From IMG/VR virus record IMGVR_UViG_3300032931_001151, positions 62,001 through 126,000 of that record: 64,000 bases of DNA. One strand, written 5' to 3'. This document shows, piece after piece, positions 15,526 through 42,400 of the stretch (position 1 is the first letter of the stretch; every line of letters begins with the position of its first letter). Position numbers and translations under genes: made by a program. Below the pieces are notes generated by a model that was not told where the DNA came from, searched no databases, and saw nothing but the letters and a program-made list of their open reading frames with translations.

Positions 15526-16761
15526 TTATCCTATTGTAGTAGCATTTAAATTAGTTATGGTCCAATCTATAGACCCAGTAAATGGAAGCTCTGATACTAT
15601 TGTAAATCCAACATTTGTTTTTGATGTCCACCAACAATTTATATTTTGATCACAACTTAAAGAAATTGCATAGTTACTTGATGTTAACGGATTTTCAAAA
15701 GTTACTTGAGCAGTCTTTTGTGCCTTAAATTGAATAGTTGCGTTTCTTTTGCCATATGTTGCTTGAGGACTTGAATCAAAAATCATAGCCTCCATAGTAG
15801 ATTGGGCCACATATTCCCCATCAACTTCCATTCCAAATATACGGCTCCAATGATCTGTTTGATATCCACTCACATGAAATTGAACTTTTATAACTCTTGA
15901 TCCCGTATCATATTGTCTTTTAACTACTTGTGACGATTCTACTGTATTACAAGAGGCATCCCCGGTAGTACAAGATATATCAACGCATCCACAAGACTCA
16001 CGCAATGTGCAATTTGCTGGTGTTTCTAACTTGCCTTGCCAAGATAATGTTACTGGATATGACACTTCACATGGATTACATTGTACAATCGCTACCCTTG
16101 ATAGTTCTATATTATTAGTATCATCCCAAAGTCTAAATACAATTGGCTCTGAGGAATTATAAGCAACAAATGCTAATTTAGCAATTATTTGTGAAATCTT
16201 ATATTCGTCTATTATAGGAGGAAGAACCATAGCCAATCCTGGAACGTCATACCATATCCATTCACCATTCAATTGATTAACGAATAAATCTCCAAAAATT
16301 ATTTCATCCGAATTACATCTTGAATACACATTAGATTGTATTTTATTAAAGAAAAATCTATCAATGCTCCATAGTCTTAAATTATCGCTCGTTGACTCGG
16401 GTTTTCTTGGTATGTTGGCACATGGACTATGATTGGTTTGAACATTGCCCATCCACCATAACGCACCCGTTAATAGGTTATTTTTCCAACTACTACTAGA
16501 ATCAACTATCTCACTCAACGTATACGGTCTACTTAACGTGCTATCATTAAATATTAACTCACCATTACTATTTGAATAAACCCCTTTTGTTCTAGTGTAT
16601 AGTTCTTTTAGAGTTATACCATTAGGTTTATCTAAAATATTGGTAACATAATCATCTTTGAATAGCAAATTACCACTAGTATCCATTGATAATGTTAACG
16701 CAGCAACATTATCCGATCTTGAGGATAAATTTACTCCGTATGTTCTATATGGTACATCCAT
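15526..16761 (-). CDS. tail-fibre-like protein, short paralog of the 3195-aa protein
   Basis: Shared N-terminal, middle and C-terminal motifs; C-terminal VTF..P....YAISL.......WW..K...GFTI......G.IDW domain. Confidence 0.75.
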   Translation of the reverse strand: MDVPYRTYGVNLSSRSDNVAALTLSMDTSGNLLFKDDYVTNILDKPNGITLKELYTRTKGVYSNSNGELIFNDSTLSRPYTLSEIVDSSSSWKNNLLTGALWWMGNVQTNHSPCANIPRKPESTSDNLRLWSIDRFFFNKIQSNVYSRCNSDEIIFGDLFVNQLNGEWIWYDVPGLAMVLPPIIDEYKISQIIAKLAFVAYNSSEPIVFRLWDDTNNIELSRVAIVQCNPCEVSYPVTLSWQGKLETPANCTLRESCGCVDISCTTGDASCNTVESSQVVKRQYDTGSRVIKVQFHVSGYQTDHWSRIFGMEVDGEYVAQSTMEAMIFDSSPQATYGKRNATIQFKAQKTAQVTFENPLTSSNYAISLSCDQNINCWWTSKTNVGFTIVSELPFTGSIDWTITNLNATTIG

Positions 16762-16772
16762 TTTTATTCCTT

Positions 16773-19700
16773 TTATAACTCGTAGAATTCGTCGTATGTT
16801 TGTTGTTCATCTAAATTGTCAATCTTATCACTTGGTATAGCATCTTCAAGATATATTGACCAATCTACATAACCAGAGAATTTCGCTTCCGCATTAATTG
16901 TAAATCCAGATGACGATTTATTTGACCACCAAACCTTTACGTTATCACTACACACCAAAGATATACTATATTTATCTTTATTTGGTAAGTAATCTGGTAT
17001 TGCATTTGTAAATTTCACCGCATAAGTAGTTATATTATTTTCAAACTTAGCACTACCTTGGCGCTCTACCGTGGTATTACTACCAACATCAAATATAGTA
17101 ACCCCAAGAGAACTTGTGGCACCCGCATTTTCACCACTTGAGAAGAATGGACTTAATGTTCTATACTTATAGTTATTATTAGAAGTATCCTCGGGTTGTA
17201 TTACTTTAGTATTCCATTTAAAAGTAACTCCAAATGTACTACTTTCCCACCAAGATTTACTCTTATGTAATTCACCATCGCCTGCTATAGCGTATCCACC
17301 TACTATAACCGAAGACTCAGTATTTCCTATAGCCGATTGGCCTATAAACCACTGATTTATTCTTTGGCAAGTAAATTCGGTATTTCCATCGAATAGATTT
17401 AATGCGGGAGCATCGCCACCCAAACCGACCCCATCTTGATACCTTCTCCATTGAGTAGGAACTATATCATTACTATTGATGCAATGTAATCCGATATACG
17501 TATTTGAATCCATATTACTATCAAGATTGTATTTGAAGAAATGCTTTTGCTCGGGATAACAAATGGAATCCTGTAAGCTTCTATATTCTTGAATAAAGCT
17601 CGTTGCCCATTCTACATATCCTTGATTGGTGTTTTGAAGTAATTGGATATTAAATGCAGAACATGGGTTAGTAGAGACATTACATGAATAACCATTAATT
17701 TGTTGTATTATAGGTCCACCAGAAACACTATTTAAGAATACGTTATTAACACTTGCTATCATATGATCCGAACAATCTATTCCATTTGACGAGTTTTCAT
17801 TTTCACTGTCTAGAATAGATTGTATTGCTTTTGCATTTCTATAATCGTCAAGGCAATAAATAAACTCATCGTAATTCACATAGACGGGTACATGAGAAGT
17901 TGAACCAGACAAATCATATGATGAGGTGGAAATAGAAGCAAAGTCATCAATAGCAACGGAAGCCGTCATTGATGCTAGTACAACGTGATCTCTATACTCA
18001 TTTACATGTAATCTTTGTCTTCTATAATTAGCCCAGACCTTTCCTTCCTCTAATGAGGTCCATAGAGTTACACCCCATCTTGGCTCTTTTCCAGTCGTTA
18101 GCCAAATATTAAACCCTTGTTCGCTATAAGGACCGGCGAAAGGGGATTCCATATATGGAGCAACCCATTCTTCGTGATTATGTTGCATCCATGGGGAGGC
18201 TGACGGACAATCGGTTACAAACGTTGAGTCACAAATGGAGCACGATATGCAATTTATATCAAATTGTGATACTAAATCAAGACCTTGAATAACATTTACA
18301 TTAGGACTAATTGATAGTGGTTCTAGTGGTAATGTGTATGCACCACTTATTTGAGTATTAAGAGAACTATCTATATATGTAGGTGAAGAATAATTAATTT
18401 TGTCTTTAGCCGACGAATTTATATTAACATTTGGAACGTTTTCTTGAATAATTTTTATATATAAATCGTAATATCTTTGCCCTTCTACCATATTAAGAGC
18501 CTCTTGTATTCCTTCACGGAAGCGAGTTCCTCTAATATCTTCAGTTAACAAATTATAATATTGAGATAGGCAAACTATACCATTTAAATTTGCTCCATCA
18601 ACTTCTTTCCAATTTGTTCTTGCTAGTGTGGTATTAAAGAATTCCGATTTCTTATCAGCACTAACTTTGATTATAGTATATAAATTCTTAAACTTATTTT
18701 GAGTGAAAGATACAAATTGCGAATCTATATATGGGTTTGTATTATTGATGTCCCCGATGGCTATCCAATAGTTTCCTTGACTATCAATCGCATCGGTATA
18801 ACCATTAGGTCCTAGTAATCCATCAAATCCCAATATATTCCAAGGCCATGCTTTATTTACTATAGCATCGTCGGGAGTTGTATCTAATGCCGAATTACTA
18901 AATTGCGAGTATTGACATGGGTTTCTTTGACCGCCATATAACAAACTTCCGCACATTGCAGTAGATTTGCCAAGTCCAAGACCACCTATTCCAAATGATT
19001 GTGGACCAGTTACATATGCACTTGAAACTATACCACCATCAACTTCCCCATTTGAATATCTATACGATCTAACTATTTCTGATCCCATGGAGTTATAATT
19101 CTGGTTGCACTCTGTCCATCCCAATATTGTGTAAGGAGCAACATATCCAGAAGGACTTGGTTGACCAAATGAGAAGAATCCTATAGAAGATAGAGGAATT
19201 GAAGATGCATTGACTAATCCGGAACTAATACACGGAATATTACCATTTATTATTTTAGAGGTGGAAACTAACAATTGACATACATTACTACTATATTGAT
19301 ATGAAGCGGAAGCGATATCAAATGATAAGCATTGCCCATTTACTCCTGGGTAATAACAACAAGCCGATGGGGCGGATGATACACTATGGCATATTGGAGT
19401 TAATGGCGGGAATCCGTCTATTATGCAATATCCACTACCAATTAAACTACTATTGGTAGTTGACATTCCGCTAATCGAACCTTGTAGTATTGAACTAATA
19501 GCAAAAGGCGAACTTTGTATAAAGAAGTTATCATTATTAAATGATAATCCAGTATTACCTATTGGAGCACTATAAATCCAAGTATCTTCATCAGATTCTA
19601 TAGTACAGAAATATCCTTTTCCATCTTGGATGTTATTTTTGTAATAACCTCCACTTAACATTTCACATATAGTTCCACGATTATAAGGATATAAATCAAT

Positions 19701-26360: not shown

Positions 26361-26368
26361 TATTTACC

Positions 26369-26839
26369 TTATTCGGCAAAGTTGAATATATTTGGATATA
26401 CCGTCGCCACTTGTCTATCGGTTATAAATGGTGGTTGCGATGCGCCTGGAGGGCCTAAACAAAAACAACCCGCCGCTTCTTGAGAGTTTATACGAAAAGT
26501 TGAAACTATGTTTTTAACGGCTATAACATTTGAATTTATTACTTCTTGAGATGCGTATAAATCGTCGGTATCTTTAACATTATCGTCAACTATAAAATAC
26601 GACGGAGTTATTATATATGTTGTATTTGTATTGGATATTTTAACAAATCCGGTGCCATTTGGGGCATTTATATTTGCAAAATAAAATCCGTTGCCTATTT
26701 CTGTAACAACACCTGTTGTAATGACTTCGGTATTAACTCTTCCGGTTATTAACCAACCAGTAGATGCTCCGCTTATTGCTGCACCACTTATATCCGTAAC
26801 ATAAACTGTATAATTTTTTGGACCCGCTTTAGATGACAT
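26369..26839 (-). CDS. putative virion protein (Ig-like, VTEIGNGFY)
   Basis: Operon context, beta-rich sequence. Confidence 0.6.
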   Translation of the reverse strand: MSSKAGPKNYTVYVTDISGAAISGASTGWLITGRVNTEVITTGVVTEIGNGFYFANINAPNGTGFVKISNTNTTYIITPSYFIVDDNVKDTDDLYASQEVINSNVIAVKNIVSTFRINSQEAAGCFCLGPPGASQPPFITDRQVATVYPNIFNFAE

Positions 26840-26863
26840 ATCCTATTCCTTTAGTATTATTTA

Positions 26864-27799
26864 TTACGGTTGACCCGATGTTCCCGAAGTACCTGAAGTA
26901 CCCGGAGTGTTACACATACACTGTTGTAGTATCTTGGCTAATAATTCAACTGTAACTATATCACTTCCTTTAGCCATTTCATAACTTTCTGCAACTTTAT
27001 GTCCCATAACACTAGTTGAGGTTATCTTTGATATACCTCTTTCAAAATCATATAGTTCATTAATATCAATATTATTTTGAATATATCCTTGATATGGGAA
27101 TGTCATACCACCCAAAAACATCTTATTAATGAGTAAGAAATTCGTATTCACCGTTCTTGTTATTTTTATCTTTATAGACTGTGTATTTCTTGCCGTAACA
27201 AATGGTAAATGATATGTCAATATTTTAGGAACATTTTGTGGATTTGTATAATAATCAAAATTTTCCCACGGTCCTACTACTCCGAAATCAATAACATCTT
27301 GTTTTCCACCTAGAATCTGTATACCAATAGTTTCAGATATAGCATTAGATTCGCTATAAGTTGTCTCGGAGCAACCTGTTGCTTTTATAGAGAATATTAA
27401 CTCTTGATCTCTTAGTATTTCCGGTATATAAATCTCTCGCTCAATCCATTTTTCACGAGAATCCACCAAATTACTTTGGCCTTCATACACCAACATCTTA
27501 TTTACCGAGTCGTAACTTATTTCAGAGTCATTAGTTACAGCATTATCGGTTAAAGATGTCCAAACGTTACATTTTCTCAATGAATCAAATTGTCCACCGT
27601 TAAAGAGTATTCTTTTTCCACTTTCATTAAAATCAAATAGATTTCCATATAGTGCAGGTATTAATAACTTATTACCATTCAAAAAATTAAGAACATATTT
27701 AAAATTATTCTCTAACTCGGATAGTGGTAAATTTATGTTGTCATTATTGACTAAATCTGTTGGATTCACATAGTTTATGTTAGTTGTAAGATCAACCAT
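26864..27799 (-). CDS. putative fibre/baseplate protein with C-terminal (GTS)n tag
   Basis: N-terminal NLPLSELENNFKY fibre-attachment-like motif; ends PGTSGTSGTSGQP. Confidence 0.7.
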   Translation of the reverse strand: MVDLTTNINYVNPTDLVNNDNINLPLSELENNFKYVLNFLNGNKLLIPALYGNLFDFNESGKRILFNGGQFDSLRKCNVWTSLTDNAVTNDSEISYDSVNKMLVYEGQSNLVDSREKWIEREIYIPEILRDQELIFSIKATGCSETTYSESNAISETIGIQILGGKQDVIDFGVVGPWENFDYYTNPQNVPKILTYHLPFVTARNTQSIKIKITRTVNTNFLLINKMFLGGMTFPYQGYIQNNIDINELYDFERGISKITSTSVMGHKVAESYEMAKGSDIVTVELLAKILQQCMCNTPGTSGTSGTSGQP

Positions 27800-27814
27800 T
27801 TAATTCTTTCCCTT

Positions 27815-28648
27815 TTATATGAGATTCCACCAATCGACTCCGGTTTTTACTATAAAGTAATCAATATAGCAAGAGGCAGGATAACTAGTACCTATTTTAA
27901 CACAATTTGTACCTTTTTCTATATAATATGTATTTATATTTTCATTTGAAGAAATTACGACAGAATAATTATATTCTATATTTCCATTGCCATCTTTGAT
28001 AATATTTCCCTTGGAATCGGTTAATGGTTGGAATGCTGGAAGTGTTTGAATTCCATCATAGGTGCTATTGGGTTGAACGATATACTCATTTAAATACCAA
28101 CTACTACTTCCAAGTCCATTATAATGACTAGTATTTGATATATCTAACGTTTCTATTAATTTTCCGTTAGTATCATACATATTGGAAGCATTATTTGTTA
28201 TACTTCTTGTTCCTGCGAATATATTCCCAGATTTATTGAATCCGGTACTTGTTAATAATGTCTTATGGATAGCAAACCAAGTAATTTCGCTACCAAGAGA
28301 ATAACTACTATTAACTACTACTCTATTAGCATACTTTGTTGACCAAAATAATGTAGAATTGTCATTACTTCTAAAAAAGACATAATAATTTGTATCGGGG
28401 AATGATGTATCAAATCTAATTGTTGTGCTCTTTTTAGTTGATGCGATTTTTAGTACACCCGATTTGGTATATTTACTATCCACCGTTGTAGTTAATATCC
28501 AGTTAAATATATTTTCTGACCCATTCCAAGCACTATTAACGGTAAATGTACCATTGACATTTCTTTCGTACCAAGTATTAGCATTAAATCCGGCTTGGGT
28601 TAATACCCCACCCATTATTTTACTATTATCTATAATTTTAGAAGCCAT
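27815..28648 (-). CDS. structural protein built from about three copies of the shared beta-sandwich module
   Basis: TIRFDTSFPDTNYYVFF...WSTK...ITWFAI plus two diverged copies. Confidence 0.7.
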   Translation of the reverse strand: MASKIIDNSKIMGGVLTQAGFNANTWYERNVNGTFTVNSAWNGSENIFNWILTTTVDSKYTKSGVLKIASTKKSTTIRFDTSFPDTNYYVFFRSNDNSTLFWSTKYANRVVVNSSYSLGSEITWFAIHKTLLTSTGFNKSGNIFAGTRSITNNASNMYDTNGKLIETLDISNTSHYNGLGSSSWYLNEYIVQPNSTYDGIQTLPAFQPLTDSKGNIIKDGNGNIEYNYSVVISSNENINTYYIEKGTNCVKIGTSYPASCYIDYFIVKTGVDWWNLI

Positions 28649-28651
28649 TTT

Positions 28652-31600
28652 TTATTCTCCCGCCGAGGAATTTGATTCAACTAATAGCTGATTCATAGGT
28701 TGTACGCCTCTAATTTGCATAAAAGCGGGGGTGAAGAGTTTAACATTAGAAGTGATAAACTCCTCAACCATTGGTTCACGATTTCTATTGATCTTTGCAT
28801 CATCATAATAAATATCAAATTTATTACTCTTATAGAGTTTAGAATTTCCTAACATATATTGCTTATCAACTTGAGTAACATATGTTTTTCCATCATTCCT
28901 TGATACTATTAGTGCTTCCCCACCATTAAAGACCATAGTTCCATCGTATCTTAATCTATTTATATTTACTAATTTATTCATTCTCCAAGCCGCTATATGA
29001 TCATCAAATGGGTTCATATTGACTTGAGAATTGATATATTGCAAATCGCCATAATACATTAGCAATTTTTGCCCATTCCACCCATCAAGTTTTACCCATA
29101 GCGTCATAATATCTCTTTCACTATCATAAGAGTCTACTTTCCAAGATAATGGCTTTGTTCCACCCTCATAACTAAATGCAAAGTGGGGGTCGGCTATATC
29201 TATTTTATTAAACTCAAATATACTTCTTATTAGTTGAGAGTTATAAGTTGACGACACATTATAGGCGTTACCTTGAAGAACAATAGGAACAACTAACGAT
29301 TCGTTATTTTCCCAAGGAATATTATTAAATGTTATGGGTCTTCTAAATAAGAAGTTTTCAAATCCTCTATTGGAAACCGTATTATCGGATTCCGATCCTA
29401 ATTTTGCCCAATATACGTTTGAATATATTATAGACATTGCATTATTATACATTTGTGAATCGTCTAAATAATCTCTAACTTCCATATAATTTAATGACGA
29501 AGTAAATGAATTATCTTGATTGTATGTAACTACATAAGTATTTGTTGTATCAAAAGTATAAGACGAGTCTGTATATAATTTCTTCCCATTAACACATAGT
29601 TCAAAGTTTACAACATATCTCTTTCCACAATAATACCCATTTACTTGCTTTCTCGTAGTATTAAGAGTAACTACATTGGTGTAATTTGGAGAAATATTTA
29701 TATTACTTTGGGATATTATTACGGTTACTTGTTGAGCCTTATTATTAAAATAATTTAATATCCATTCTTGTTGATATGGATTATAAGCAACATCTAGAGC
29801 ATAGACTGAAGGGTTCCCATTACAATGTAATTTGACAATTCCCAAAGAAGAATCGACATATTGTTTAGATTGTGTTTCCAAACCTATTATGGTTTGTGGC
29901 ATTAATTCATCAACCACAACTTGAACCGTGTAATAATTTGCAATATAGTTTACTTCAGTTAAGTAGAAAATAGGAATTGAATACAAATCCGATATTATCG
30001 GTTGATTTGGACTACCCGAAGTTCCCGATGTGCCCGATGTACCAGATGATCCAGTTGTTGGACAATTTATAGAAAATATAAGTTGTTTTATTTCTGGATG
30101 TTCATCATAAATAAACACTCTATTGTCTTCAGTTATATCTTCTCTTATACAACCAAAAGCAACACTATAACCGTCATCACTTATATCTAATGATTCGCCA
30201 CTATACATTTGTGTAGTAGGAATTTTATTGAATTCAAAATATCTTCTAAAATATACATTAGAATTAAATTGCTTAACACTAAAACTACTCTTTGCGAATA
30301 TAATACTAGCATCTTGATTTGACTTGACGCTAATTCCAAAATTTCCATTAATGGCCGATTCTGGATCCGACACTATAATTTCTTGATACGGTATTTGTCC
30401 TATATTAAACCAATTCAAATTATTAAATATATGAACTAACCCGGCGCTATTCAATTCATTGGGACAACCGACTACTATAGTTGAGCCGTCTTTACTTAAA
30501 TCAATAGAGTATTTTGAAAATAACATACCCGCATATGAATTGCTTGGTATTAATTTTATCAATTTCAAAAGACTAGTAAAAATACAACGAGTATCAAATA
30601 TTGGTATATTATAAGCATAAACCGCACCACCATTTAAATAATTTTGGCTATCATTCTTAGCCGATACTATTATATTAGATGAGACATCATTAACTCTAAC
30701 TTGTTCTCCATATCTCTTTCCTTGTAATCCGTTTGCTAGACATTCCTTGTACGACATACCACCTATAGCCACATCGCTTGAATCGTATGGTATTAATCTA
30801 GCAATAAAATTCCAATTTGATCCACTAATAGTATCACCATAGATATAATCTCTACCAGAAATTGGGGTTGATGCTATATCTAAATCTTTTTGATCTATTA
30901 TGCCATCTTGATTCAAATCTAAAACTGGGTTCCACAATGGACTTGAAGAATTTGTTCCCAATGCGGCAGAAATATCAACTATACTTGCAGCGGTTAATGG
31001 GTTTGTAGTTACCATATAAACCGCACCATTATTACCAATATCAAATTCATCTAATAGAGCGCCGGTTGAATCATACTTTCTATAACTATAATACTCACTA
31101 GGAGATCCTATTAATAAGAAACTACCATCGTTAGAAGTTGATACTGAGCAACCAAATTCATAATTATTTACTATATTTCCAAAATAATCGGTTGAAGTTA
31201 AATATGATTGTTGTGAACTAGGCAATATATCATTAGTTTGTATAACTTGTTGATTATAAGAATGCCATTCATTATTTGTTGTATATGTTCTAACAACATA
31301 TCCGGTATAATTAAATTGCTTTCCAAATGGTATTATATTTCCAACATCTTTATTTGTTGCCACTGAAGATATTACTACAAATGATCCATCAAAATTAATA
31401 TCTATTTTTTCCTCGTCCGAAATTTCAAGAAATCTATTTAAATTAAATATATCATGCGACGAAGGTTTAATCTCGTTAATAAATCTCCATTGCGATCCAC
31501 ATCGTTTATATATAAGGACTCTTGAGGTGGGGACATTATATATTGGAACACCAATATTATTAGTGAATACGTAATTCTTTATAACTATAACGGCGGTATT

Positions 31601-33676
31601 GCCATCACCCGAAAGTTTTACTATTCTGCCGAAATCTATTGAATTTTTAAGAATACTATGTGTTGGGACTATTTCTTGTAAATTGGCGTAATAGTTTTCC
31701 GTATACTGATTGCCGGTAAGTGGAACGACTTCTACAAAAGGATTCACGTTTTCAATTTGAATTCCATCTTGTCTTATTTGTTGAGTAGTATATGATACTC
31801 TTTGTTCTGCTTGATACACCGGAGTAAATTCGGTGTATTTATCATATACCGAATCTAAAAGTATATGTTTATGTGGAGCATAATCATCATCAAAGGTATT
31901 AGTTCCAACTATATTTGTATCAATAGATGTTTGAATTGACGTTTCGTTTATATTAAATGCTACGGTGTATGACATATCATCAACTATATTAGTTGAGTCA
32001 AATGAAACCGACGAACTTCCTATTTTTATTTCTTTCTCATGCGGTGAGCCTAGTTGTAAATATTGTATTCCATCATTTAACGTTTTTATTTGCCTTGAAC
32101 TATTAAAATTTTCTTTATCTATTTTAGTTATATCGTCAAATACTAAATATGCTTCCCCTATTCCGTGATTTTCGACCGATAAAAGTTGTGTGCTTGAAGT
32201 TTTAGGAACAAACGTGGTTGTCAATTTAGGGGAATCATGTATAATATCTTTTTCCCAAAGATAATTTATATAACTCTTTTTATTGTCAATTTTACAGTCT
32301 TCTATTTCATATCCAACTATAGTAAACAAATCGTCTTGTAATATTACGGACGAAGCGAAAAAGTCTTGTTTTAATATGAAAACGCCAGAAGAATCTAATA
32401 CTGATATATTTTTCTTATTCAAATATCCAGCCAATATATTCTCAAATTCGGCATCATTGGAGAAACTCAAATCAACTTTTATAACTCCAAAATTCCAACT
32501 ATAACTAATATGATTATATTTTTGTTCATATTTTGGATCGTTGCTTATAGGAAGCAATTCATTAAAGAATATATAACAGTTAGAAATATCTTTTTTATTT
32601 GATGGGATTATACTTGTTATAAATTTGGTATGTAGGTATGGAACAAGTTGGTTATTAACTTCACCAAAATATTGAATATTCCCATTTAAACACTCGGTTA
32701 CACGAGCGAATGCATAATTTGCATTACTTGATATCGCTTGCGTCACGGTACTAAAATCGTAATCAATAAATTTATTAAGAGATACATCCTCATAATTTTT
32801 AACTATAAGATCGTGTATTTTGTTGGAATCGTCTATATAGAATATATTCGTATACCCATTTTTATCTACTATTTGTACAATTTCTTTATATGTTGCTTGT
32901 ATTGGTATTAATTCTTTCAAATCAACTTCCGAACTACTACCGAGACTTCCCAAATATACTTTGGAAATGTTTAGTCTTCCGCTATTTCTTTCAATATTAC
33001 TTATTACAAGATCGTTAATAGAATAGGTATAAGAATATCCTGTTATATCTATAATATTCTTATCTTCGTCACATTCTCTTTTTATCCATATTTTTAAATA
33101 CTCACCAGGCATTAAGTAGTCATTGTAAGCAATAGATGATTGCCAAGTTCTTCCAGATGCTACAACTAAATTTTGAAGTTCGTCAATACTATCAAGTTCA
33201 TTTGTTATAGTAAATGTATTTTTACTTGATTGTATATTATACTTTCCCTCATACCATATTGACAATTTAACACTATTTGTTAGATATGTTATGGCTTCGG
33301 GTATAGTCATTCCGACAGGAATATTAGTTGGAGTTGTAAAAGAAACGCTTGACGAAATATTATCTATATATTCCAAAAAATTAGAATTAGATATTCCCGA
33401 ATCCGCTTCACAACCAATATAGATACATCTATAAGTGGTAGCACCTTTAATGAAGTCAAAGTCTGTTACGCTATTGTAAAACCAATTTGACGACTGTTGT
33501 CCAGGAAGAACTTCTGAATTAGATATTAATTTTGAATCAACTTTATCAAAAGGGAATGATGTTAATGATTTTTCTTTTACTATTGCCCCACCCAATGATT
33601 GGCCAATCCAATACCCGCTAGTATTGATATTTACTGGATTGGTCGTATTACCTGATGATGGGCGATATATAATCAT
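28652..33676 (-). CDS. 1674-aa virion adhesin-like protein (FG-GAP propeller, dockerin-like EF-hand, DUF2341-like C-terminus)
   Basis: FGCSVSTSNDGSFLLIGSP, GAVY, DLSKDGSTIVVGCP; DLNQDGIIDQKDL; LSWKVDSYD...LWVKL...LMYYGD. Confidence 0.75.
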   Translation of the reverse strand: MIIYRPSSGNTTNPVNINTSGYWIGQSLGGAIVKEKSLTSFPFDKVDSKLISNSEVLPGQQSSNWFYNSVTDFDFIKGATTYRCIYIGCEADSGISNSNFLEYIDNISSSVSFTTPTNIPVGMTIPEAITYLTNSVKLSIWYEGKYNIQSSKNTFTITNELDSIDELQNLVVASGRTWQSSIAYNDYLMPGEYLKIWIKRECDEDKNIIDITGYSYTYSINDLVISNIERNSGRLNISKVYLGSLGSSSEVDLKELIPIQATYKEIVQIVDKNGYTNIFYIDDSNKIHDLIVKNYEDVSLNKFIDYDFSTVTQAISSNANYAFARVTECLNGNIQYFGEVNNQLVPYLHTKFITSIIPSNKKDISNCYIFFNELLPISNDPKYEQKYNHISYSWNFGVIKVDLSFSNDAEFENILAGYLNKKNISVLDSSGVFILKQDFFASSVILQDDLFTIVGYEIEDCKIDNKKSYINYLWEKDIIHDSPKLTTTFVPKTSSTQLLSVENHGIGEAYLVFDDITKIDKENFNSSRQIKTLNDGIQYLQLGSPHEKEIKIGSSSVSFDSTNIVDDMSYTVAFNINETSIQTSIDTNIVGTNTFDDDYAPHKHILLDSVYDKYTEFTPVYQAEQRVSYTTQQIRQDGIQIENVNPFVEVVPLTGNQYTENYYANLQEIVPTHSILKNSIDFGRIVKLSGDGNTAVIVIKNYVFTNNIGVPIYNVPTSRVLIYKRCGSQWRFINEIKPSSHDIFNLNRFLEISDEEKIDINFDGSFVVISSVATNKDVGNIIPFGKQFNYTGYVVRTYTTNNEWHSYNQQVIQTNDILPSSQQSYLTSTDYFGNIVNNYEFGCSVSTSNDGSFLLIGSPSEYYSYRKYDSTGALLDEFDIGNNGAVYMVTTNPLTAASIVDISAALGTNSSSPLWNPVLDLNQDGIIDQKDLDIASTPISGRDYIYGDTISGSNWNFIARLIPYDSSDVAIGGMSYKECLANGLQGKRYGEQVRVNDVSSNIIVSAKNDSQNYLNGGAVYAYNIPIFDTRCIFTSLLKLIKLIPSNSYAGMLFSKYSIDLSKDGSTIVVGCPNELNSAGLVHIFNNLNWFNIGQIPYQEIIVSDPESAINGNFGISVKSNQDASIIFAKSSFSVKQFNSNVYFRRYFEFNKIPTTQMYSGESLDISDDGYSVAFGCIREDITEDNRVFIYDEHPEIKQLIFSINCPTTGSSGTSGTSGTSGSPNQPIISDLYSIPIFYLTEVNYIANYYTVQVVVDELMPQTIIGLETQSKQYVDSSLGIVKLHCNGNPSVYALDVAYNPYQQEWILNYFNNKAQQVTVIISQSNINISPNYTNVVTLNTTRKQVNGYYCGKRYVVNFELCVNGKKLYTDSSYTFDTTNTYVVTYNQDNSFTSSLNYMEVRDYLDDSQMYNNAMSIIYSNVYWAKLGSESDNTVSNRGFENFLFRRPITFNNIPWENNESLVVPIVLQGNAYNVSSTYNSQLIRSIFEFNKIDIADPHFAFSYEGGTKPLSWKVDSYDSERDIMTLWVKLDGWNGQKLLMYYGDLQYINSQVNMNPFDDHIAAWRMNKLVNINRLRYDGTMVFNGGEALIVSRNDGKTYVTQVDKQYMLGNSKLYKSNKFDIYYDDAKINRNREPMVEEFITSNVKLFTPAFMQIRGVQPMNQLLVESNSSAGE

Positions 33677-33686
33677 TCATTGACCT

Positions 33687-36600: not shown

Positions 36601-39422
36601 CCACCCGCCGATACTCTTGATATTATATTTGATATATCCGAGCAATTTCTAAATCTAACACCCACAACCCTTTGATTGTTTGCGTTATTTACGACTATAG
36701 GATAGAATAAAATATTATTATATGCAGTTCCATCTTGATTAACTTCTATTCCACACATTGAATCATTAGAAAATATAGTGGAATTTGGACAAACCTCTTC
36801 AAATAACCCCAAAACTCTATTTTGATTATTTGATAGTTTATACTGTTGTATTTTATCATTTGCTTGGAATTCGCTACTCAATAAAGTCGTCTTTATGTCC
36901 CTATTGTCAATTCTCGTGACTGAGGAAAAAGCATCAAATGGTTCGGTTTTATATAAACCCAAAGTAGTAGAAACGTTATATACGAAATAACCCGGAGTGT
37001 CTATAATATTTGGAGCATCTACGGTTCCAAAATCATGATTTGAAGTAGTTTCTCCAAAATAATTCAAGTAGAAATCTCTATCGTATACTCGACTTTCAAT
37101 AGCAAACCACGACGGTTGACTTCCAAATGGAACTATTATCTTATTCATAACATCTTGTTCATTAACGAAATTGGTCTTAATCCAATCGCCGTCAAATGAT
37201 ACGGTATATCTACTTGCCAATTCTTCTGTTACCGGAGAATTATCAAAATATAAATGTTTGAATGCCGAAGTTTCGTTTGATTGTAGAGCATATGTTTTTA
37301 CATTAGGATCAAACGTTTCACTTAGCGTAATGCTAAAAGTATCATTTTTATGTTGATCAAACGAGTTAAACGATAATAATTTACTATTTTGCCATTCTAG
37401 ATACTTTGGTTTTAGATCTAACTCTTTTTGTGTATCATTATACAATGTATCTTCGAGATCAAGATTGTTCAAATAAATTTCAAATATTTCCACTATGCTA
37501 TTTTTAACACCTACTCCATAAAATCCACTTGATAAGAGTGCTTTATATTGATATGATGGGATTATTTGTCCCGTACTATCAATAGATAATATGTTTGAAT
37601 CGGACACGTTTATATCAACATTTTCAAATAGTGGAACCCAGGTTGATAGGGTTTGACCAAACGGAACTTCACCCTCGTTAGATTCAATTTTTTGTGTTAT
37701 AGTGTCATACTCTAATGCTTCTCTATAATAGGCTGAAACCAATGAATCTACAATAGACAATTTCAATTCATAAAATGTATTGAACTTAAAAGCTTTAACA
37801 TCATCATCATTTTCTATTATAAGTTTAGAAAATATAGGATTGGTAGAGTCGGACTGATTCAAATTTATTTGTTGGGTTACTATTTCCCCATTAGCAGAAT
37901 TCAAAATAACTTTTGATAAAGAGATGGTCGAATTCTTGGCATTTAGCGATAATCTATAATATTCGTTGAAATTATAATAACTTGAATCGTCGGTTTTTTC
38001 TCCCCTAAAAGTCAAAAATATTTCATTATCCGGTATTTTAAAATTATTATCTTCATAAGTTGATGGAATTGATAGATATTTAAATCTAACAGTATAGTCC
38101 ATATTCTTAACAATAGCATCAGTCGTAGCAACGAGAGAATCTATGGACTCATTTGATGTTGTTTCGTAATTAATAGATATCTTATCGCCATCCGTGAGAT
38201 AACTAGTTTTTATTTTTAACAAGTAAGGATATACCGATCTCGTTTCAGTGTCAGCATTAGGAATTATGTCATAATAATCCGATGTTATTTCTTCCGAGAC
38301 AATCATGTTACCATTATTTAGTCTAATATCTTTGAATATAGGAGTGCTATGATATATTCTAAAATAAGCATATTCATCTGGATCCATATCATCATCGTCA
38401 CTATCTAAAGTATCAGTCGGAAAATCTAATTTTTGAACTGTATGATAATTGTCTAGAGTAAAAGAATTAAACTCTTTTACTAAATGACCCACGTCGTTAT
38501 TGTTTCCTATTACGAGTAAATCTTCCCATTTTAATCCAAATTTATTATCTGTGAAGTTATCATAGCCGACAAAATTATCATCTATTATACCTTTTGGTAT
38601 TAATCCCCAATATTGGGTCCACAAGTCCATTGATTTGGCATCAATTGAAAATAGCGATAAGAATTGTTTTATTTGGTTTGGCGTACCACCCGTCTTGAAT
38701 ATATCAACGCTTAATAGCAAGAACTGTCTAAATGCATTTATTTCCGATGTAGTTGCAACATTATTATTTATTTTTTGAAATATATCATATTGCTCAAAAG
38801 TGTCATCATTGGCATTTCCACCTATTTTTCTCGCATAATCTACATTATGTCCTAATGTAAGGGCCAAATAATTAAAATATTTAGGATCTACTTTTTCAAT
38901 ATCAATTAGATTATATATTCCTTGTATGTCACTATAGATACTATCAAAAAACTTTGATGCTGAATTAATAAGATCTACGTTTGCTTGATTGTTTGCTCCA
39001 TACTCCCACATTGGGTTATTTTTGACAATCATTTTATAGAAAAACGAATTTACATCAACATTTTGTATGTATGTATACGTAAATTGGAAAGGTATTCCAT
39101 TATAGAACTGTTGTTCCGATGTAATAGTTATAGATATGGTATAAGTACCGGATGTTTTAAAACAATGAGTTATTGATTGGGTTGAATAAAAATAACCATC
39201 TTGAGTACTCCAACTATACTTTGTTGCCTCATTAATAGAATAATTGTAGTATATTGGTATTATGTCTTCTTTATTGACATTGCCAACTATTTGCATGGCA
39301 TTAGAAGTGATTTGACTTGACAATATTGGACCAGGAGTAAATTCGGCATTAAAATACAACTTATCGTTTGCGTAATTCGCCGTTCCGCCATTGCCATTAG
39401 TTATTGTTACATCAAAAGCCAT
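33687..39422 (-). CDS. baseplate wedge protein (P2 gpI / T4 gp7-like) with PKD and two ConA-like domains
   Basis: FFDSIYSDIQGIYNLIDIEKVDPKYFNYLALTLG...IFKTGGT..IKQFL; THCFKTSGTYTISIT; position directly after gp6. Confidence 0.75.
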   Translation of the reverse strand: MAFDVTITNGNGGTANYANDKLYFNAEFTPGPILSSQITSNAMQIVGNVNKEDIIPIYYNYSINEATKYSWSTQDGYFYSTQSITHCFKTSGTYTISITITSEQQFYNGIPFQFTYTYIQNVDVNSFFYKMIVKNNPMWEYGANNQANVDLINSASKFFDSIYSDIQGIYNLIDIEKVDPKYFNYLALTLGHNVDYARKIGGNANDDTFEQYDIFQKINNNVATTSEINAFRQFLLLSVDIFKTGGTPNQIKQFLSLFSIDAKSMDLWTQYWGLIPKGIIDDNFVGYDNFTDNKFGLKWEDLLVIGNNNDVGHLVKEFNSFTLDNYHTVQKLDFPTDTLDSDDDDMDPDEYAYFRIYHSTPIFKDIRLNNGNMIVSEEITSDYYDIIPNADTETRSVYPYLLKIKTSYLTDGDKISINYETTSNESIDSLVATTDAIVKNMDYTVRFKYLSIPSTYEDNNFKIPDNEIFLTFRGEKTDDSSYYNFNEYYRLSLNAKNSTISLSKVILNSANGEIVTQQINLNQSDSTNPIFSKLIIENDDDVKAFKFNTFYELKLSIVDSLVSAYYREALEYDTITQKIESNEGEVPFGQTLSTWVPLFENVDINVSDSNILSIDSTGQIIPSYQYKALLSSGFYGVGVKNSIVEIFEIYLNNLDLEDTLYNDTQKELDLKPKYLEWQNSKLLSFNSFDQHKNDTFSITLSETFDPNVKTYALQSNETSAFKHLYFDNSPVTEELASRYTVSFDGDWIKTNFVNEQDVMNKIIVPFGSQPSWFAIESRVYDRDFYLNYFGETTSNHDFGTVDAPNIIDTPGYFVYNVSTTLGLYKTEPFDAFSSVTRIDNRDIKTTLLSSEFQANDKIQQYKLSNNQNRVLGLFEEVCPNSTIFSNDSMCGIEVNQDGTAYNNILFYPIVVNNANNQRVVGVRFRNCSDISNIISRVSAGGTESIQLYGLFILQLPIEAIKFRPELNKNLEVFADDQNTVIVKMFVPLGALNSEIQNYSLGTEYMHDINNSGATSIILDSVYTRIPRDVMTYKEQDSILVLPSLNPYEDDSKSLKCRYYWSAELQLATNLNDYEVVSEGISTKYMMNYDFRKMLDGLDKSNVSFDSYLWWIPKELWRKRDFDVLKLDSKFDVATGLNYDSSSDKYFYGTKVNSNSQVNSLRIKIKDGPITPYTTYYAKVKFKMSWSGFDELLLGNASLVDGSVKPARPLSALEASQLVTVGGKSSKYLNSMPAPVADCIDFYVPISWYPESELPSDNVIQWGNYIKGTNGDVNSPSVSLTPYGLMSYLIMNSTNANFNSIDISQVTSGWTIQDWNDRFMQFVNIEYIAELIPSSAYKLYNDFGFVSKYAPANSAKIVINYNAGDLDWKVIDSVTMYPQGYNSYYFNIPNALYRLVNWTEDVESIKVSNYVIPLNLYTISNNTLTLSNDNIYNVLESGSMNMSVSFDDIFSDSVNKVILVDDFYSTREIDWINYQENNYKDILELVIRNPSEVLFTSGTDPLLKITNFNGIHVLHSTQGNTINKYDPLLSGVSYNNSTSISKDSNGGYTPTLSLIDEQHDSFQLETLVWFDDALNSLKGYNGKHFEYIIKTETDFNPKTNTYILSSYYFVGIGTYNFDVALGVAKYNPATNTMDKTFLAGFGNYNSNNISTNTWYKLKVLVDSKFIRIIFNEEKDDDRMVIKYDIDINYQYDVNRYLNGEFEQLVYLVTGLENLKITYPNNLQSIAGDTFYTNNWNETWAANIRPLGLYAGIKLFNPYTYVKNVTYTALIQDDKTFTTANELVDLNSIILEIENNYTTNGIVEMIGKTINGGVIVQYGTDLFHKMPNKFVIKRYENVENIYISNNKIVIKFNSNNVLTLSIIDENFTNIQNVYVKDNYFNTDHIYKYLLWTSREIEDIYATPSNLYVTFNDV

Positions 39423-39431
39423 TGCGTTTCC

Positions 39432-42400
39432 TTATTGTTCTAGTTCTAGTATTATATTTCCAAGTTGAGGAAATTCGTATGGTCCTAATATGATTTTCAA
39501 ACTATAGTCCCAACTCGTTGTCCCGTTAGTATTTAGTGAACTAAATAGTGGTTGGAATATTCTAACAAGTGATGGATCTTTTGTAACTAATTCCATTAGT
39601 TTATTTCTTCTAGCTATATCGGTTTGTTCTTGTGTAGAATATATAGTATTTATAGATGCAACATAATCGGATGGAGTAAGCTTATTGTCGGGATTCTTAT
39701 TTAACATTACTTCAAACGAATCCACCGCATCAATAGCACTTATTAAATTTCCAATATATGAGTTCTCTATAGTTTCACCTAGATTGTGATTAGTATAGTT
39801 GAAATAATCTCCTATAGATTGTTTTATTTGTGATTCAATAATATCCGGATTTCCATAACTTTTTGCTTTATATCTAACAAGAACATCAATTGGAACCCAA
39901 GTTGCGGGAATTACGACGTGCTTTTTCCCAATAACTTTGACTGGATCACTATCAAGAGTATTAACTATTAAATCGTTTAAATTCTTACTGATAGTATTAG
40001 TGCCATCTTTGTTCAATATAATGACGAACACATAATTAAAGAAATAATTAGAATTTTCGGTTGAACTTATTAATCCTGCAGATTTAGCTTCTTCGTAATC
40101 CAAAACTTTTGCTCTTACTACGTAATCATTAAATACTTGTTCAACATAATTTAGCGTATCGTTAACCGAAACGTTTCTACCTTGACTCGTAAAGTAGTTT
40201 GTTGCATTTCTTCTTAACTCGTCAACCGTTTCTACATTATTTCCGCCAAATGCATTTTGATTTTGAATAATAGTCAAGTCGGTCGTTTGTAGTTTTGTTC
40301 CCTCAGAATCTACTAATCTTGTTTCAGGTGAAGACCCATTAAAATATTGTTGAGTCTTTAATCCCAACAATTCAACGAAATTATCTTCAAATTTAATATC
40401 TGTTTGGTCGTTTCCTAAAATATATTGCGAAACAATTATTTGATCGTTGAGAGTTGATTTATTGATATTGCCATCATTTCCAACAGAATTTAATCCAATA
40501 ATAAAAGTTTCTTTATCTAATGGCGAGGATCCATAGTTAACACCATCCCCAAAATCAATAGTAATTAATTGATCGGGGTTTGCTCTAACGAAAAATACTT
40601 GTTGCCCAACTGCTATATCCGAATTAAACCCAGTCCCCGAGCGTTTCCACTCATCCCATGTCCCAGAATCGTTTTTAACGAAAACTCTTAAGCTATTAAT
40701 AGATATATTTGAGTTATTAACTATATATCTAACATCATTGTCCGACAATCTTGATGGATCTATAGATATATTTAATCCATTATTGTTTGTATCTATGTTA
40801 GTACTTTTATCAATATATGTAAATGTAATTTGTCCTTGTAATAAATTATTAATGGCAAAAGTTTCGGGGACGTTCGTGAATCTTAAACCGGGTATAGTAG
40901 CAGCACTTGAGGTGCTTCCAGAAAAATCTATTTCGCCATGGCGTTGGAATGCGTATCCAGTACTACTATCAACATACCAATTTATAGTAACCACTTGATC
41001 TGTTATACCTGGCTCAATATTAATAGTAAACCCACTTGAACTCTTATTAGTATAATAGGTAACTAAATTAGCATCTGGAACTAGTTGTATAGCATAATTT
41101 GTATCGGTAATAGGAGTCTTGAGTTGTATGGCACCACTCGTTTCTCCTGGACGCAATACTATAGTTCCAATTTGTCTATATCCGCTTTCTGGTTCCGATG
41201 GAATGGTATCATTTTGGAAGAAATTGAAAATACTCCAACTTATCTTACCCGAAAAAGATTTTTCGGTTTTTACAGAGAACCCAGTTGTTCCAGCATTCTC
41301 ATACCATACTTGAATGTTATCATTAGGAGTTAATTGAACCATATAATTAGAAGTTAGACCATCTTGACTTATTCCTAATGGCATAGGTGTGTCAAATACT
41401 ACATCTTTTTGTTTAACATTCTCTTGAACTATTCTAGTAGCCGACCAACCAATAGTTCCAGCAAATTGTGTATTTGGTTCAACATATATAGTAAATCCGC
41501 TCTCATCCGAATTAGAATACCAAGTTCTAACATTATCTGAAGGAGTTAATTGAATGCTATATTCAACTTTAACTTCATTAGGATTTAACACGAAAGCACT
41601 ATTAAAATACACTTTTTGCGATGTTACTCCACTTCCAAATGTAACTTGGCCAGCTTTTTGTTCAGACGTTTGTATTGGCTCAGGTTCAACAACTTGGAAA
41701 TTTCCAAATTTTGTACTATTTGAAGTTGCTAATGCTGACGTTGAGGTTGTTGAATCTATGAAATTTGTAGTAATAGTAGCAATAGTAACTTGATTAGATA
41801 AAGGAGCATTAGCCGTTACTTCTAATCTAGCACCATAGTTGTTTATTGAATCGGTTTCATCTGCAATGACCAAATTAATATTATATGTAGGAACGTCGGA
41901 GCTAAAGAAGTTCTTGTCAAATTGTTGACTTGAAATAGTCCCGCTACTAAAAGTATAAAATACACCATTAATCAACACGGTTAATGGAGATTGAGATCCA
42001 TCTTTATTAACTACCAAATTTATTTGCTTTATAGCATTTGGAACATCTTGAAAATAAGAGAATTCAAGCTTAGTGCTATCTAAATTCTGTAGCCCTAAAA
42101 CTCCAGTAAAAAATCTATTAATTGTGCCATCTTCATAGAATTTTAATGAATAATTCATATTAGTATTGTCGGTTGGTTGAAGAATAATTGCTACTAATAT
42201 ATCATTTGCTTTTTCACCTAGGGTAGTCTTATCTTCCGCTATACTAATATATGGTGATGATGTATTCTTATCCCAATTGAATATTAAGTAATACGGAGTA
42301 TTAGGCACCATCGTCTTACTATACGCTATCGTTGGGATAGTTTGGATGAATGGTTGCCCAACCGAATTTGGATTACTTGGGTCAAATAATGGATAATTAG

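What the first reader, a model, noticed from the sequence alone, without database searches (positions are those of the whole stretch)
15526..41665. One ~65-aa module reused about eight times across the wedge and fibres: candidate docking system
Seen: a module G...F......V.F..P.....Y.I.L....N...W......GF.I......G.I.W occurs three times in tandem inside the gp6-like wedge (about 40965-41665), about three times in the 277-aa protein (27815-28648, two copies diverged), and once at the C-terminus of both the 411-aa and 3195-aa proteins. Knowledge: this resembles the H-type-lectin-like small beta-sandwich at many fibre C-termini, which normally trimerises, and T4 gp6 has no such insert. Inference: triple tandem copies may form single-chain pseudo-trimers acting as sockets or adaptors for fibres, or give the wedge its own glycan-binding surface.
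Basis: partly seen in the sequence, partly recalled or inferred. Interest (0 to 1): 0.75.

Follow-up and report, generated by a model that had tools for sequence, protein, structure and literature searches.

The report
Lectin-fold knob reused across phage baseplate
An uncultured 214-kb phage uses one small lectin-shaped domain at the tips of its tail fibres and also, as three tandem copies, inside its baseplate wedge protein; the domain is a known fibre-tip fold, but its triple insertion into the wedge has no described counterpart that I could find.

Summary
A ~70-aa module occurs three times in tandem in the gp6-like wedge protein. It occurs once at the C-terminus of the 3195-aa and 411-aa proteins, and one clear plus two diverged times in the 277-aa protein. 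It occurs nowhere else in the 214-kb genome.

Predicted models (pLDDT 85-90) give the H-type-lectin / discoidin-like beta-sandwich. They match the Pam1 and LKA1 tailspike C-termini, the R-pyocin fibre foot, Helix pomatia agglutinin and AP22 gp53 (Z 7-10, rmsd about 2 A). No copy reaches a Pfam threshold.

The wedge triplet is a clean ~272-aa cassette. Shorter gp6 homologues lack exactly it, and all 86 long homologues carry exactly three copies. The 277-aa protein is the detached C-terminal domain of the neighbouring 1674-aa protein, since the two are fused in relatives. The whole set is conserved in at least six related large phage genomes.

My best reading is that fibres carry one copy per chain and trimerise, while other carriers hold three copies in one chain. 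High pTM (0.72, 0.83) supports compact units, but three-fold geometry was not verified. The docking-socket idea has no direct support; the only complex prediction run, on the three wedge copies alone, gave no answer. I rate it a new variant of a known kind, of moderate interest.

The parts
39432..43046 (-). gp6-like baseplate wedge protein, 1204 aa, carrier of the triple cassette
   Evidence: Pfam Baseplate_J reaches 28.7 bits against a cut-off of 21.1 at aa 924-1099. Gp6-like_1st reaches 21.3 bits, below its cut-off, at aa 14-81. PHROG 219 'baseplate wedge subunit' scores 2.5e-34. The gene lies directly after the gp25-like and hub genes.
40932..41747 (-). Inserted cassette, aa 434-705: a 24-aa linker followed by three tandem modules
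   Evidence: gp6 homologues of 847 aa (L038) and 874 aa (L039) align to aa 1-433 and to aa 706 or 723 to 1204 only. The AlphaFold2 model of aa 455-705 has pLDDT 90.3 and pTM 0.72.
41427..41657 (-). Wedge module a (aa 464-540), six predicted strands
   Evidence: HMM domain E 1e-31 and 3e-21. Fold matches to the R2 pyocin foot (Z 8.2), SLL-2 (7.6) and AP22 gp53 (7.2).
41217..41414 (-). Wedge module b (aa 545-610); lacks the first strand and has five predicted strands
   Evidence: HMM domain E 1e-29, covering profile positions 8-73. Secondary structure.
40959..41177 (-). Wedge module c (aa 624-696)
   Evidence: HMM domain E 8e-27. Fold matches to the Pam1 tailspike C-terminus (Z 9.8), LKA1 gp49 (8.6) and Helix pomatia agglutinin (7.9, rmsd 2.0 A over 70 aa).
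28652..33676 (-). 1674-aa baseplate or fibre protein whose C-terminal domain is encoded separately as the 277-aa protein
   Evidence: In G001 and G002 one ORF of 1336-1369 aa aligns to this protein (aa 2-590 and 1328-1668) and then to the 277-aa protein (aa 8-277).
27815..28648 (-). 277-aa protein with three beta units: a half-recognisable copy (about aa 18-57), a full copy (aa 62-131) and an interrupted copy (about aa 143-270)
   Evidence: HMM results. AlphaFold2 with a 27-sequence family alignment gives pLDDT 84.6 and pTM 0.83. Residues 54-133 match Pam1 (Z 9.2), the R1 pyocin foot (8.1) and AP22 gp53 (7.4).
16842..17063 (-). C-terminal module of the 3195-aa fibre-like protein (aa 3100-3173), followed by a 22-aa acidic tail
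   Evidence: HMM domain E 1.7e-34. Orthologous position in large proteins of G001-G005 and G010.
15544..15753 (-). C-terminal module of the 411-aa protein (aa 337-406), ending 5 aa before the stop
   Evidence: HMM domain E 8e-30. Orthologues of 429-467 aa with the same C-terminal module occur in G001-G005 and G010.

Best explanation
The module is a ~70-aa H-type-lectin-fold (discoidin-like, gp53-like) beta-sandwich. In every solved relative named here this domain works as a three-fold symmetric trimer at the distal end of a fibre, tailspike or lectin.

This phage lineage uses it in two formats.
- In the 3195-aa and 411-aa proteins there is one copy at the C-terminus. If these are trimeric fibres, which is assumed and not tested, the chains supply the trimer.
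- In the other carriers the same unit is written out as three tandem copies in one chain. One is a 272-aa cassette inserted at a single point of the gp6-like wedge protein. In T4, gp6 sits as two non-equivalent copies per wedge; this is my knowledge and was not tested here. The other is the C-terminal domain of the 1674-aa protein, here split off as the 277-aa protein.

I think the resulting knobs most likely act as conserved low-specificity adhesion points for a host surface glycan. That would give the baseplate its own contacts in addition to the fibre tips.

Shown: the copies, their fold, the cassette boundaries, the fixed number three, the split versus fused gene, and conservation of the set.

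Inferred: the closed pseudo-three-fold packing and the ligand.
For: - Copies and coordinates.
- Fold: predicted models with pLDDT 90.3 and 84.6. Single modules superpose on Pam1 tailspike 7eea (Z 9.8 and 9.2), LKA1 gp49 4ru4 (8.6), R2 and R1 pyocin feet 6cl6 and 6cxb (8.2, 8.1), HPA 2ccv (7.9, rmsd 2.0 A over 70 aa, 19% identity), SLL-2 3wmp (7.6) and AP22 gp53 4mtm (7.2-7.4).
- AFDB and ESM Atlas neighbours are proteins carrying Pfam H_lectin, several with tandem arrays.
- These domains are trimeric, and their distal loops are the proposed sugar site (PMC6363177).
- Cassette: insert-less homologues lack exactly aa 434-705.
- Fixed number: 86 of 86 homologues at 40-91% identity have three copies. 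Copies a, b and c are each orthologous among the closer relatives.
- Compactness: pTM is 0.72 and 0.83. By my estimate, three ~80-aa domains with undefined mutual placement would give roughly 0.4.
- The 277-aa protein is fused to the 1674-aa homologue in G001 and G002.
- The set is conserved in G001-G005 and G010.
Against: - No copy reaches the Pfam thresholds for H_lectin or Gp53-like_C, so kinship rests on fold.
- Splitting the three copies into separate chains gave no usable complex prediction.
- Copy b lacks the first strand.
- The N-terminal unit of the 277-aa protein did not give lectin-fold matches of its own.
- Nothing shows sugar binding. In KP32gp38 the lectin-like C-terminal domain serves trimerisation rather than capsule binding (PMC13082707).
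- The modules are as conserved as their carriers, or more so: wedge 34-48% against 40-45%, fibre tips 36-46% against 28-33%. This is unlike host-range-determining tips.
- The oligomeric states of the 3195-, 411- and 1674-aa proteins are assumed.
Confidence: 0.5

Rival explanations
1. Structural knob without an external ligand. At fibre tips the module is mainly a trimerisation and folding nucleus. In the wedge and the 1674/277-aa protein the triple copies are a rigid decoration or brace that contacts neighbouring baseplate proteins and stabilises a very large baseplate.
For: - In KP32gp38 the lectin-like C-terminal domain is necessary and sufficient for trimerisation and does not confer capsule binding or specificity (PMC13082707).
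- The modules here evolve no faster than their carriers, and the fibre-tip copies evolve more slowly, as expected for structural elements.
- The cassette and the whole set are stably inherited across 40-91% identical relatives.
Against: - A trimerisation role is meaningless for three copies already joined in one chain, so the wedge cassette needs another explanation.
- gp6 homologues without the cassette exist, so it is not needed for wedge assembly as such.
- The fold's best-characterised members bind sugars.
Confidence: 0.28
2. The wedge-borne and 277-aa triple units are sockets or adaptors that hold the module-bearing C-termini of the 3195-aa and 411-aa fibres, for example in a stowed state before attachment.
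For: - Wedge triplet, 277-aa-type unit and the two module-tipped proteins always occur together in seven genomes (G000-G005 and G010).
- Two contig fragments whose wedge lacks the cassette carry no module at all.
- As general knowledge, T4 short tail fibres are stowed against baseplate proteins, so tip-to-baseplate contacts have precedent.
Against: - No interaction test succeeded. The only complex job addressed the three wedge copies and returned no answer.
- Co-occurrence is confined to one lineage, and the insert-less contigs are 7-21% complete, so it carries no independent weight.
- The same tip domain is common where, to my knowledge, no gp6-like wedge exists, in podophage tailspikes. It is C-terminal in 84% of 145 database proteins of all sizes.
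- Fibres normally attach to baseplates by their N-termini (general knowledge).
- A closed pseudo-trimer would leave no free lateral interface for a further module.
Confidence: 0.12
3. Independent beads. The three copies are a flexible string of separate lectin or spacer domains, like Ig-like repeats on other virion proteins, with no defined mutual arrangement.
For: - Tandem H_lectin arrays in cellular proteins exist. Their predicted models superpose on the triplet only two modules at a time (TM 0.25-0.40).
- The split-chain complex prediction did not assemble the copies, although that is formally no evidence.
Against: - Bead arrays usually vary in number, and here 86 of 86 homologues have exactly three.
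- pTM values of 0.72 and 0.83 indicate defined inter-module placement.
- The a-to-b linker is only about 4 residues.
- The cassette enters and leaves the wedge at a single point, so its two ends must lie close together.
Confidence: 0.08

Closest known systems
C-terminal 'foot' of R-type pyocin fibres (6CL6, 6CU2, 6CXB) and AP22 tail fibre gp53 (4MTM)
   Same: The fold is the same small beta-sandwich (Z 7.2-8.2, rmsd 2.2-2.9 A over 72-76 aa). The position is also the same: the extreme C-terminus of a myovirus-type fibre, as in the 3195-aa and 411-aa proteins. These domains are trimeric, and their distal loops are the proposed LPS-binding site (PMC6363177).
   Different: Sequence similarity is below the Pfam Gp53-like_C cut-off (best 11.4-13.9 bits against 24.9). 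Those proteins carry one copy per chain. None has tandem copies or an internal position in a wedge protein.
H-type lectins: Helix pomatia agglutinin (2CCV), coral lectin SLL-2 (3WMP), and the Discoidin I lectin domain (2W94)
   Same: The fold matches (Z 7.9, 7.6 and 7.4-8.0; 19% identity to HPA). The nearest AFDB and ESM Atlas neighbours carry Pfam H_lectin, and some carry tandem arrays of it.
   Different: The Pfam H_lectin model does not detect any copy here. Sugar-binding residues were not compared. The context here is a virion baseplate rather than a soluble lectin.
Lectin-like C-terminal domains of tailspike depolymerases (Pam1 7EEA, LKA1 gp49 4RU4, phi297 4RU5, AP22 gp54 4Y9V, KP32gp38 9QRM)
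   Same: These are the best fold matches overall (Z 9.8 and 8.6 for the first two; 20% identity to Pam1). The domain is also the last one of a trimeric receptor-binding protein. Database relatives of the module likewise follow beta-helix or pectate-lyase domains.
   Different: In KP32gp38 the domain was shown to drive trimerisation rather than binding (PMC13082707). No enzymatic domain was detected in the four carriers here.
Carbohydrate-binding modules inserted into structural tail proteins of siphophages ('evolved' Dit, Tal and neck-passage proteins; PMC6669499)
   Same: The logic is the same: a core assembly protein of the tail tip acquires an inserted sugar-binding-type domain, so that the baseplate itself can adhere.
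   Different: The phage type differs (siphophages of Gram-positive hosts), as do the carrier proteins and the CBM folds. Those inserts are single modules, not a triplicated domain that normally forms trimers.
T4 gp6 / Baseplate_J family wedge proteins
   Same: The N-terminal helical segment, the C-terminal Baseplate_J region and the hub, gp25, gp6 gene order all match.
   Different: The protein is about twice the length of the 660-aa T4 gp6 (that length is from my own knowledge). It has a lineage-specific middle part that includes the 272-aa triple-lectin cassette, which is absent from the 847-874-aa homologues.

Membership tests
H-type lectin domain (Pfam PF09458 H_lectin) | Sequence match to the family model above its gathering score (24 bits) | tested here: not met
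   None of the five clear copies matched, even at E<=10. The model run on the whole genome hit only an unrelated frame with stop codons (14 bits). Only 2 of 62 database relatives reached E 0.0015.
H-type lectin domain (Pfam PF09458 H_lectin) | Six-stranded antiparallel beta-sandwich superposable on Helix pomatia agglutinin | tested here: met
   The predicted model of module c against 2ccv_A gives Z 7.9, rmsd 2.0 A, 70 of 99 residues and 19% identity. SLL-2 gives Z 7.6. The middle copy of the 277-aa protein gives Z 6.8. AFDB and Atlas neighbours are annotated H_lectin. This rests on predicted models, not solved ones.
H-type lectin domain (Pfam PF09458 H_lectin) | Three-fold (pseudo-)symmetric trimer of domains | tested here: inconclusive
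   pTM values of 0.72 and 0.83 suggest compact three-domain units.
H-type lectin domain (Pfam PF09458 H_lectin) | Binding of GalNAc or another sugar at the protomer interface or distal loops | not testable with these tools
   This needs glycan arrays or cell-binding assays. Binding-site residues were not mapped.
Gp53-like_C (Pfam PF21882, AP22 gp53 type fibre C-terminus) | Sequence match above the gathering score (24.9 bits) | tested here: not met
   The best match in the genome is 11.4 bits, on the middle copy of the 277-aa protein and in register (positions 15-82 of 84). A 411-aa-type relative reached 13.9 bits. One of 62 relatives reached E 0.004.
Gp53-like_C (Pfam PF21882, AP22 gp53 type fibre C-terminus) | Fold match to 4MTM and location at the C-terminal end of a tail fibre | tested here: met
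   Z is 7.2-7.4 with rmsd 2.5-2.9 A over 74-75 aa. The C-terminal location holds for the 411- and 3195-aa proteins and for 84% of 145 database proteins. It does not hold for the wedge copies, which are internal.
gp6 / Baseplate_J wedge protein (for the 1204-aa carrier) | Match to Baseplate_J (PF04865) above its cut-off, and to the gp6-like N-terminal helical domain | tested here: met
   PF04865 reaches 28.7 bits against a cut-off of 21.1. PF21379 reaches 21.3 bits, below its cut-off of 27. PHROG 219 'baseplate wedge subunit' scores 2.5e-34. PF21379 is precomputed on many homologues.
gp6 / Baseplate_J wedge protein (for the 1204-aa carrier) | Gene order hub (gp5/gp27-like), gp25-like, gp6-like, then large peripheral proteins | tested here: met
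   The same order is seen in the relatives L001, L004 and L006.

The most novel reading that the evidence does not exclude
The wedge cassette and the 277-aa unit are single-chain mimics of a fibre tip that pair head-to-head with the real, trimeric fibre tips. Helix pomatia agglutinin pairs two trimers in a comparable way. The giant 3195-aa fibre and the 411-aa protein would then be held stowed on the baseplate. Competition by the host glycan for the same surfaces would release them and pass the attachment signal directly to the wedge. That would make it a lectin-based latch linking receptor binding to baseplate triggering.
Probability: 0.07. Interest if true: 0.8.

Novelty: new variant of a known kind. 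Interest (0 to 1): 0.5.

Why it matters
Fibre-tip lectin-fold domains are well known. They are usually discussed as the ends of trimeric fibres. Here a lineage of uncultured phages with large genomes (contigs up to about 400 kb) has turned the same domain into a single-chain triple unit. It has placed that unit in a core assembly protein of the contractile-tail baseplate, the gp6-like wedge, and at the end of a second large baseplate protein.

If the pseudo-trimer reading holds, it gives a clear natural example of how an obligate trimer domain can be moved onto non-trimeric carriers. It would also mean that the wedge itself can carry adhesion points. I know of no description of this for gp6-type proteins.

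It also offers compact, monomeric lectin-like units (about 250 aa) that could be expressed and tested for ligand binding. The practical limit is that the host and any cultured relative are unknown.

Tried and rejected
- Sequence searches of the module against Pfam and against PDB sequences found nothing meaningful. The weak PDB hits, to capping enzymes and GH32, are chance.
- Running the Pfam H_lectin and Gp53-like_C models on the genome gave only sub-threshold matches, so I do not file the module as a member of either family by sequence.
- Searches of 50,697 deposited phage records found no match: megablast and tblastn of the wedge gene and tblastn of the cassette.
- Foldseek against PDB with the whole three-domain model was uninformative except for Pam1. 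The weak PCSK9 C-terminal-domain hits (TM 0.24) looked like a possible pseudo-three-fold analogue, but they did not reappear in the VIA search and I dropped them.
- Complex prediction with modules a, b and c as separate chains scored 0.15 against a mark of 0.32. Chain pLDDT was only 54-60.
- Model coordinates are not exposed, so no symmetry calculation was possible.
- An ESM Atlas lead suggested that the N-terminal part of the 411-aa protein is an F5/8-type-C discoidin domain, which would have made it discoidin-I-like. The score was 0.82. Pfam scans of ten family members did not support it, so I rejected it.
- The first related-loci run with a single protein found nothing. The alignment-based call worked.
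- The phiKZ baseplate paper (PMC13250141) describes no lectin-like wedge insert. The Z 4.2-4.9 match to 9xqs_A is too weak to use.
Full report
CONTEXT

All genes between 13.8 and 45.1 kb lie on the minus strand and form one tail and baseplate block. In order they encode:
- a hub/spike protein of 544 aa (Phage_base_V and PHROG 430);
- a gp25-like protein of 129 aa (PF04965, 8.9e-15);
- a gp6-like wedge protein of 1204 aa (Baseplate_J above its cut-off, PHROG 219 at 2.5e-34);
- proteins of 1911, 1674, 277, 311, 156, 3195, 411, 135, 186 and 240 aa.

The window belongs to a 214,200-base IMG/VR virus record that CheckV rates about 90% complete. GC content is about 32%. Neither the wedge gene nor the cassette finds anything by BLAST in 50,697 deposited phage genomes. 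The lineage therefore has no close relative among those records.

I built an HMM from the five obvious copies and ran it on every open frame of the 214-kb genome. It recovers:
- three adjacent copies in the wedge (aa 464-540, 545-610, 624-696; window 40959-41657);
- one copy at the C-terminus of the 3195-aa protein (aa 3100-3173);
- one copy at the C-terminus of the 411-aa protein (aa 337-406).

It also finds the 277-aa protein, which was not in the model, at E 3e-5. With a broader model of 155 family members the 277-aa protein reaches 5.7e-17. That protein has one full copy (aa 62-131, 2.8e-12) and a C-terminal partial copy (aa 228-270, 8.5e-6). Its N-terminal half copy is not significant here, but it is significant in orthologues (4e-5; 3e-7). 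Nothing else in the genome scores better than E 0.7.

The five-copy profile finds 341 protein clusters at E<=1e-3 among 1.84 billion representatives. Among the 145 best with a near-complete module, 84% have it within 45 aa of the C-terminus. This holds in proteins from 70 to 3473 aa. Some of these proteins also carry beta-helix or pectate-lyase domains.

WHAT THE MODULE IS

No Pfam model detects any copy. The H_lectin and Gp53-like_C models run on the genome stay far below their cut-offs. The best match is 11.4 bits for Gp53-like_C, in register on the middle copy of the 277-aa protein.

The fold is nevertheless clear.
- AlphaFold2 on wedge aa 455-705 gives pLDDT 90.3 and three sandwiches of five to six strands.
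- A structure search that does not depend on Foldseek matches single modules to a consistent set of proteins:
  - Pam1 tailspike C-terminus (Z 9.8);
  - LKA1 gp49 (8.6);
  - the R2 pyocin fibre foot (8.2);
  - Helix pomatia agglutinin (7.9, rmsd 2.0 A over 70 residues, 19% identity);
  - the coral lectin SLL-2 (7.6);
  - AP22 gp53 (7.2).
- The middle copy of the 277-aa protein gives the same list.
- AlphaFold DB and ESM Atlas neighbours are proteins carrying Pfam H_lectin, some as tandem arrays.

These are the discoidin-like or H-type lectin domains. PMC6363177 describes them as trimeric and places the proposed sugar site in the distal loops. So the module has that fold and works like that family. 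By sequence criteria it is not a member of either Pfam family.

THE WEDGE TRIPLET IS A DISCRETE AND ANCIENT CASSETTE

- A database search returned 82 homologues of about 1200 aa at 40-91% identity, from contigs of up to 406 kb.
- Together with the window's own protein and three earlier hits, all 86 carry exactly three modules.
- More distant gp6 homologues of 847 and 874 aa were found in IMG/VR. They align to aa 1-433 and to aa 706 or 723 to 1204, and so lack exactly aa 434-705. They show no module match.
- In a tree of 191 module sequences, copies a, b and c each group with the same-position copies of the closer relatives. The triplication therefore predates their divergence. Support values are modest, and the two most distant wedges place less cleanly.
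- The cassette is as conserved as the rest of the wedge.

THE 277-AA PROTEIN IS A DETACHED C-TERMINAL DOMAIN

In G001 and G002, whose wedges are about 42% identical to this one, a single ORF of 1336-1369 aa aligns first to the 1674-aa protein and then to aa 8-277 of the 277-aa protein.

In the window the two genes are separated by TAA plus three bases. They are in the same frame, with a GGAG upstream of the ATG. Closer relatives also encode the piece separately.

AlphaFold2 with the family alignment gives pLDDT 84.6 and pTM 0.83. The model has three beta-rich units, the third interrupted by a long insertion.

THE SET TRAVELS TOGETHER

In six related genomes or large contigs (G001-G005 and G010; 72-332 kb) the module occurs 7-8 times each, in the same four places:
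- three copies in the wedge;
- one copy at the end of a large protein of 1342-2478 aa;
- one copy at the end of a protein of 429-467 aa;
- two to three copies in the 277-aa-type unit.

The two contigs with an insert-less wedge have no module at all. They are only 7-21% complete.

PSEUDO-TRIMER OR BEADS

Four points favour a compact three-part unit.
- The number three is invariant.
- pTM is 0.72 and 0.83. By my estimate, three ~80-aa domains without defined mutual placement would give roughly 0.4.
- The linker between copies a and b is about four residues.
- The cassette enters and leaves the wedge at a single point.

All solved relatives named above are trimers. This makes 'three copies in one chain where the carrier cannot trimerise' an economical explanation.

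It remains an inference. I could not read coordinates. The one complex prediction, with the three copies as separate chains, folded the chains poorly and returned 'no answer'. Predicted tandem H_lectin arrays of cellular proteins superpose on only two modules at a time.

FUNCTION

The fold suggests sugar binding, and an inserted binding-type domain in a baseplate assembly protein has an analogue. Siphophage Dit, Tal and neck-passage proteins carry inserted carbohydrate-binding modules (PMC6669499).

Two facts argue for caution.
- In KP32gp38 the lectin-like C-terminal domain drives trimerisation and is not what binds the capsule (PMC13082707).
- The modules here are as conserved as their carriers, or more so. 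Fibre-tip copies are 36-46% identical, against 28-33% for the preceding fibre parts. This is not the pattern of a host-range-determining tip.

I therefore favour a conserved, low-specificity adhesion or anchoring role. The structural part of this explanation is well supported and the ligand is not. I put overall confidence at 0.5. A purely structural role is the main rival at 0.28.

Nothing tested it successfully. The co-occurrence is lineage-wide inheritance. The same tip domain is also common on podophage tailspikes, and to my knowledge those phages have no gp6-like wedge.

NOVELTY

The domain and its place at fibre tips are known. Tandem H-type lectin arrays exist in cellular proteins.

I did not find the following described:
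- the triplicated domain as a cassette inside a gp6-type wedge protein;
- its second appearance as a split or fused C-terminal unit of another baseplate protein;
- the conservation of the whole set in a clade of uncultured phages with large genomes.

This is a new variant of a known kind, of moderate interest.

Noticed in passing
window 28646-28654 (junction of the 1674-aa and 277-aa genes): The 1674-aa gene ends in TAA. Three bases later the ATG of the 277-aa gene follows in the same reading frame, with GGAG 7 nt upstream. In G001 and G002 the two are one ORF of 1336-1369 aa. This is a gene split, or a fusion in the relatives. Readthrough was not examined.
   Followed up: partly
window 16773-16841 (last 22 aa of the 3195-aa protein) and database hits: Fibre-tip modules come in two classes. 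One ends 0-5 aa from the C-terminus (63 of 145 proteins, the 411-aa type). The other is followed by an 18-26 aa tail (44 of 145, the 3195-aa type). That tail is strongly acidic here and poorly conserved (18-23% identity to G001 and G002). Its role is unknown.
   Followed up: partly
window 39110-39230 (1911-aa protein, aa 65-105): A PKD-like stretch scores just below the Pfam cut-off (PKD_4, 26.3 bits against 27). The 1911-, 1674- and 3195-aa proteins otherwise have no Pfam or PHROG match.
   Followed up: no
window 15946-16089 (411-aa protein, aa 225-272): A cysteine-rich segment lies just upstream of the module and gives a weak metallothionein-like match (E 0.086). It could be a metal or disulfide knot.
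   Followed up: no
whole record G000; window 39432-43046: IMG/VR classes the 214-kb record as 'provirus'. Its wedge protein finds nothing by tblastn among 50,697 deposited phage genomes. Metagenomic relatives sit on contigs of up to about 400 kb. Host and lineage were not determined.
   Followed up: no
database proteins P0011 (3341 aa) and P0065 (1771 aa): These match only positions 3-42 of the module profile, 20 and 9 times respectively. This looks like a different repeat that shares the first strands, not this module.
   Followed up: no
PDB 9xqs chain A, residues 204-299 (phiKZ baseplate, inner peripheral region): There is a weak fold match (Z 4.2-4.9) of a module to a domain of a phiKZ baseplate protein. 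It is too weak to interpret. The phiKZ paper mentions no lectin-like domain.
   Followed up: partly
L001 2791-3324: A relative's tail-gene region carries an HNH endonuclease gene two genes upstream of its hub gene.
   Followed up: no
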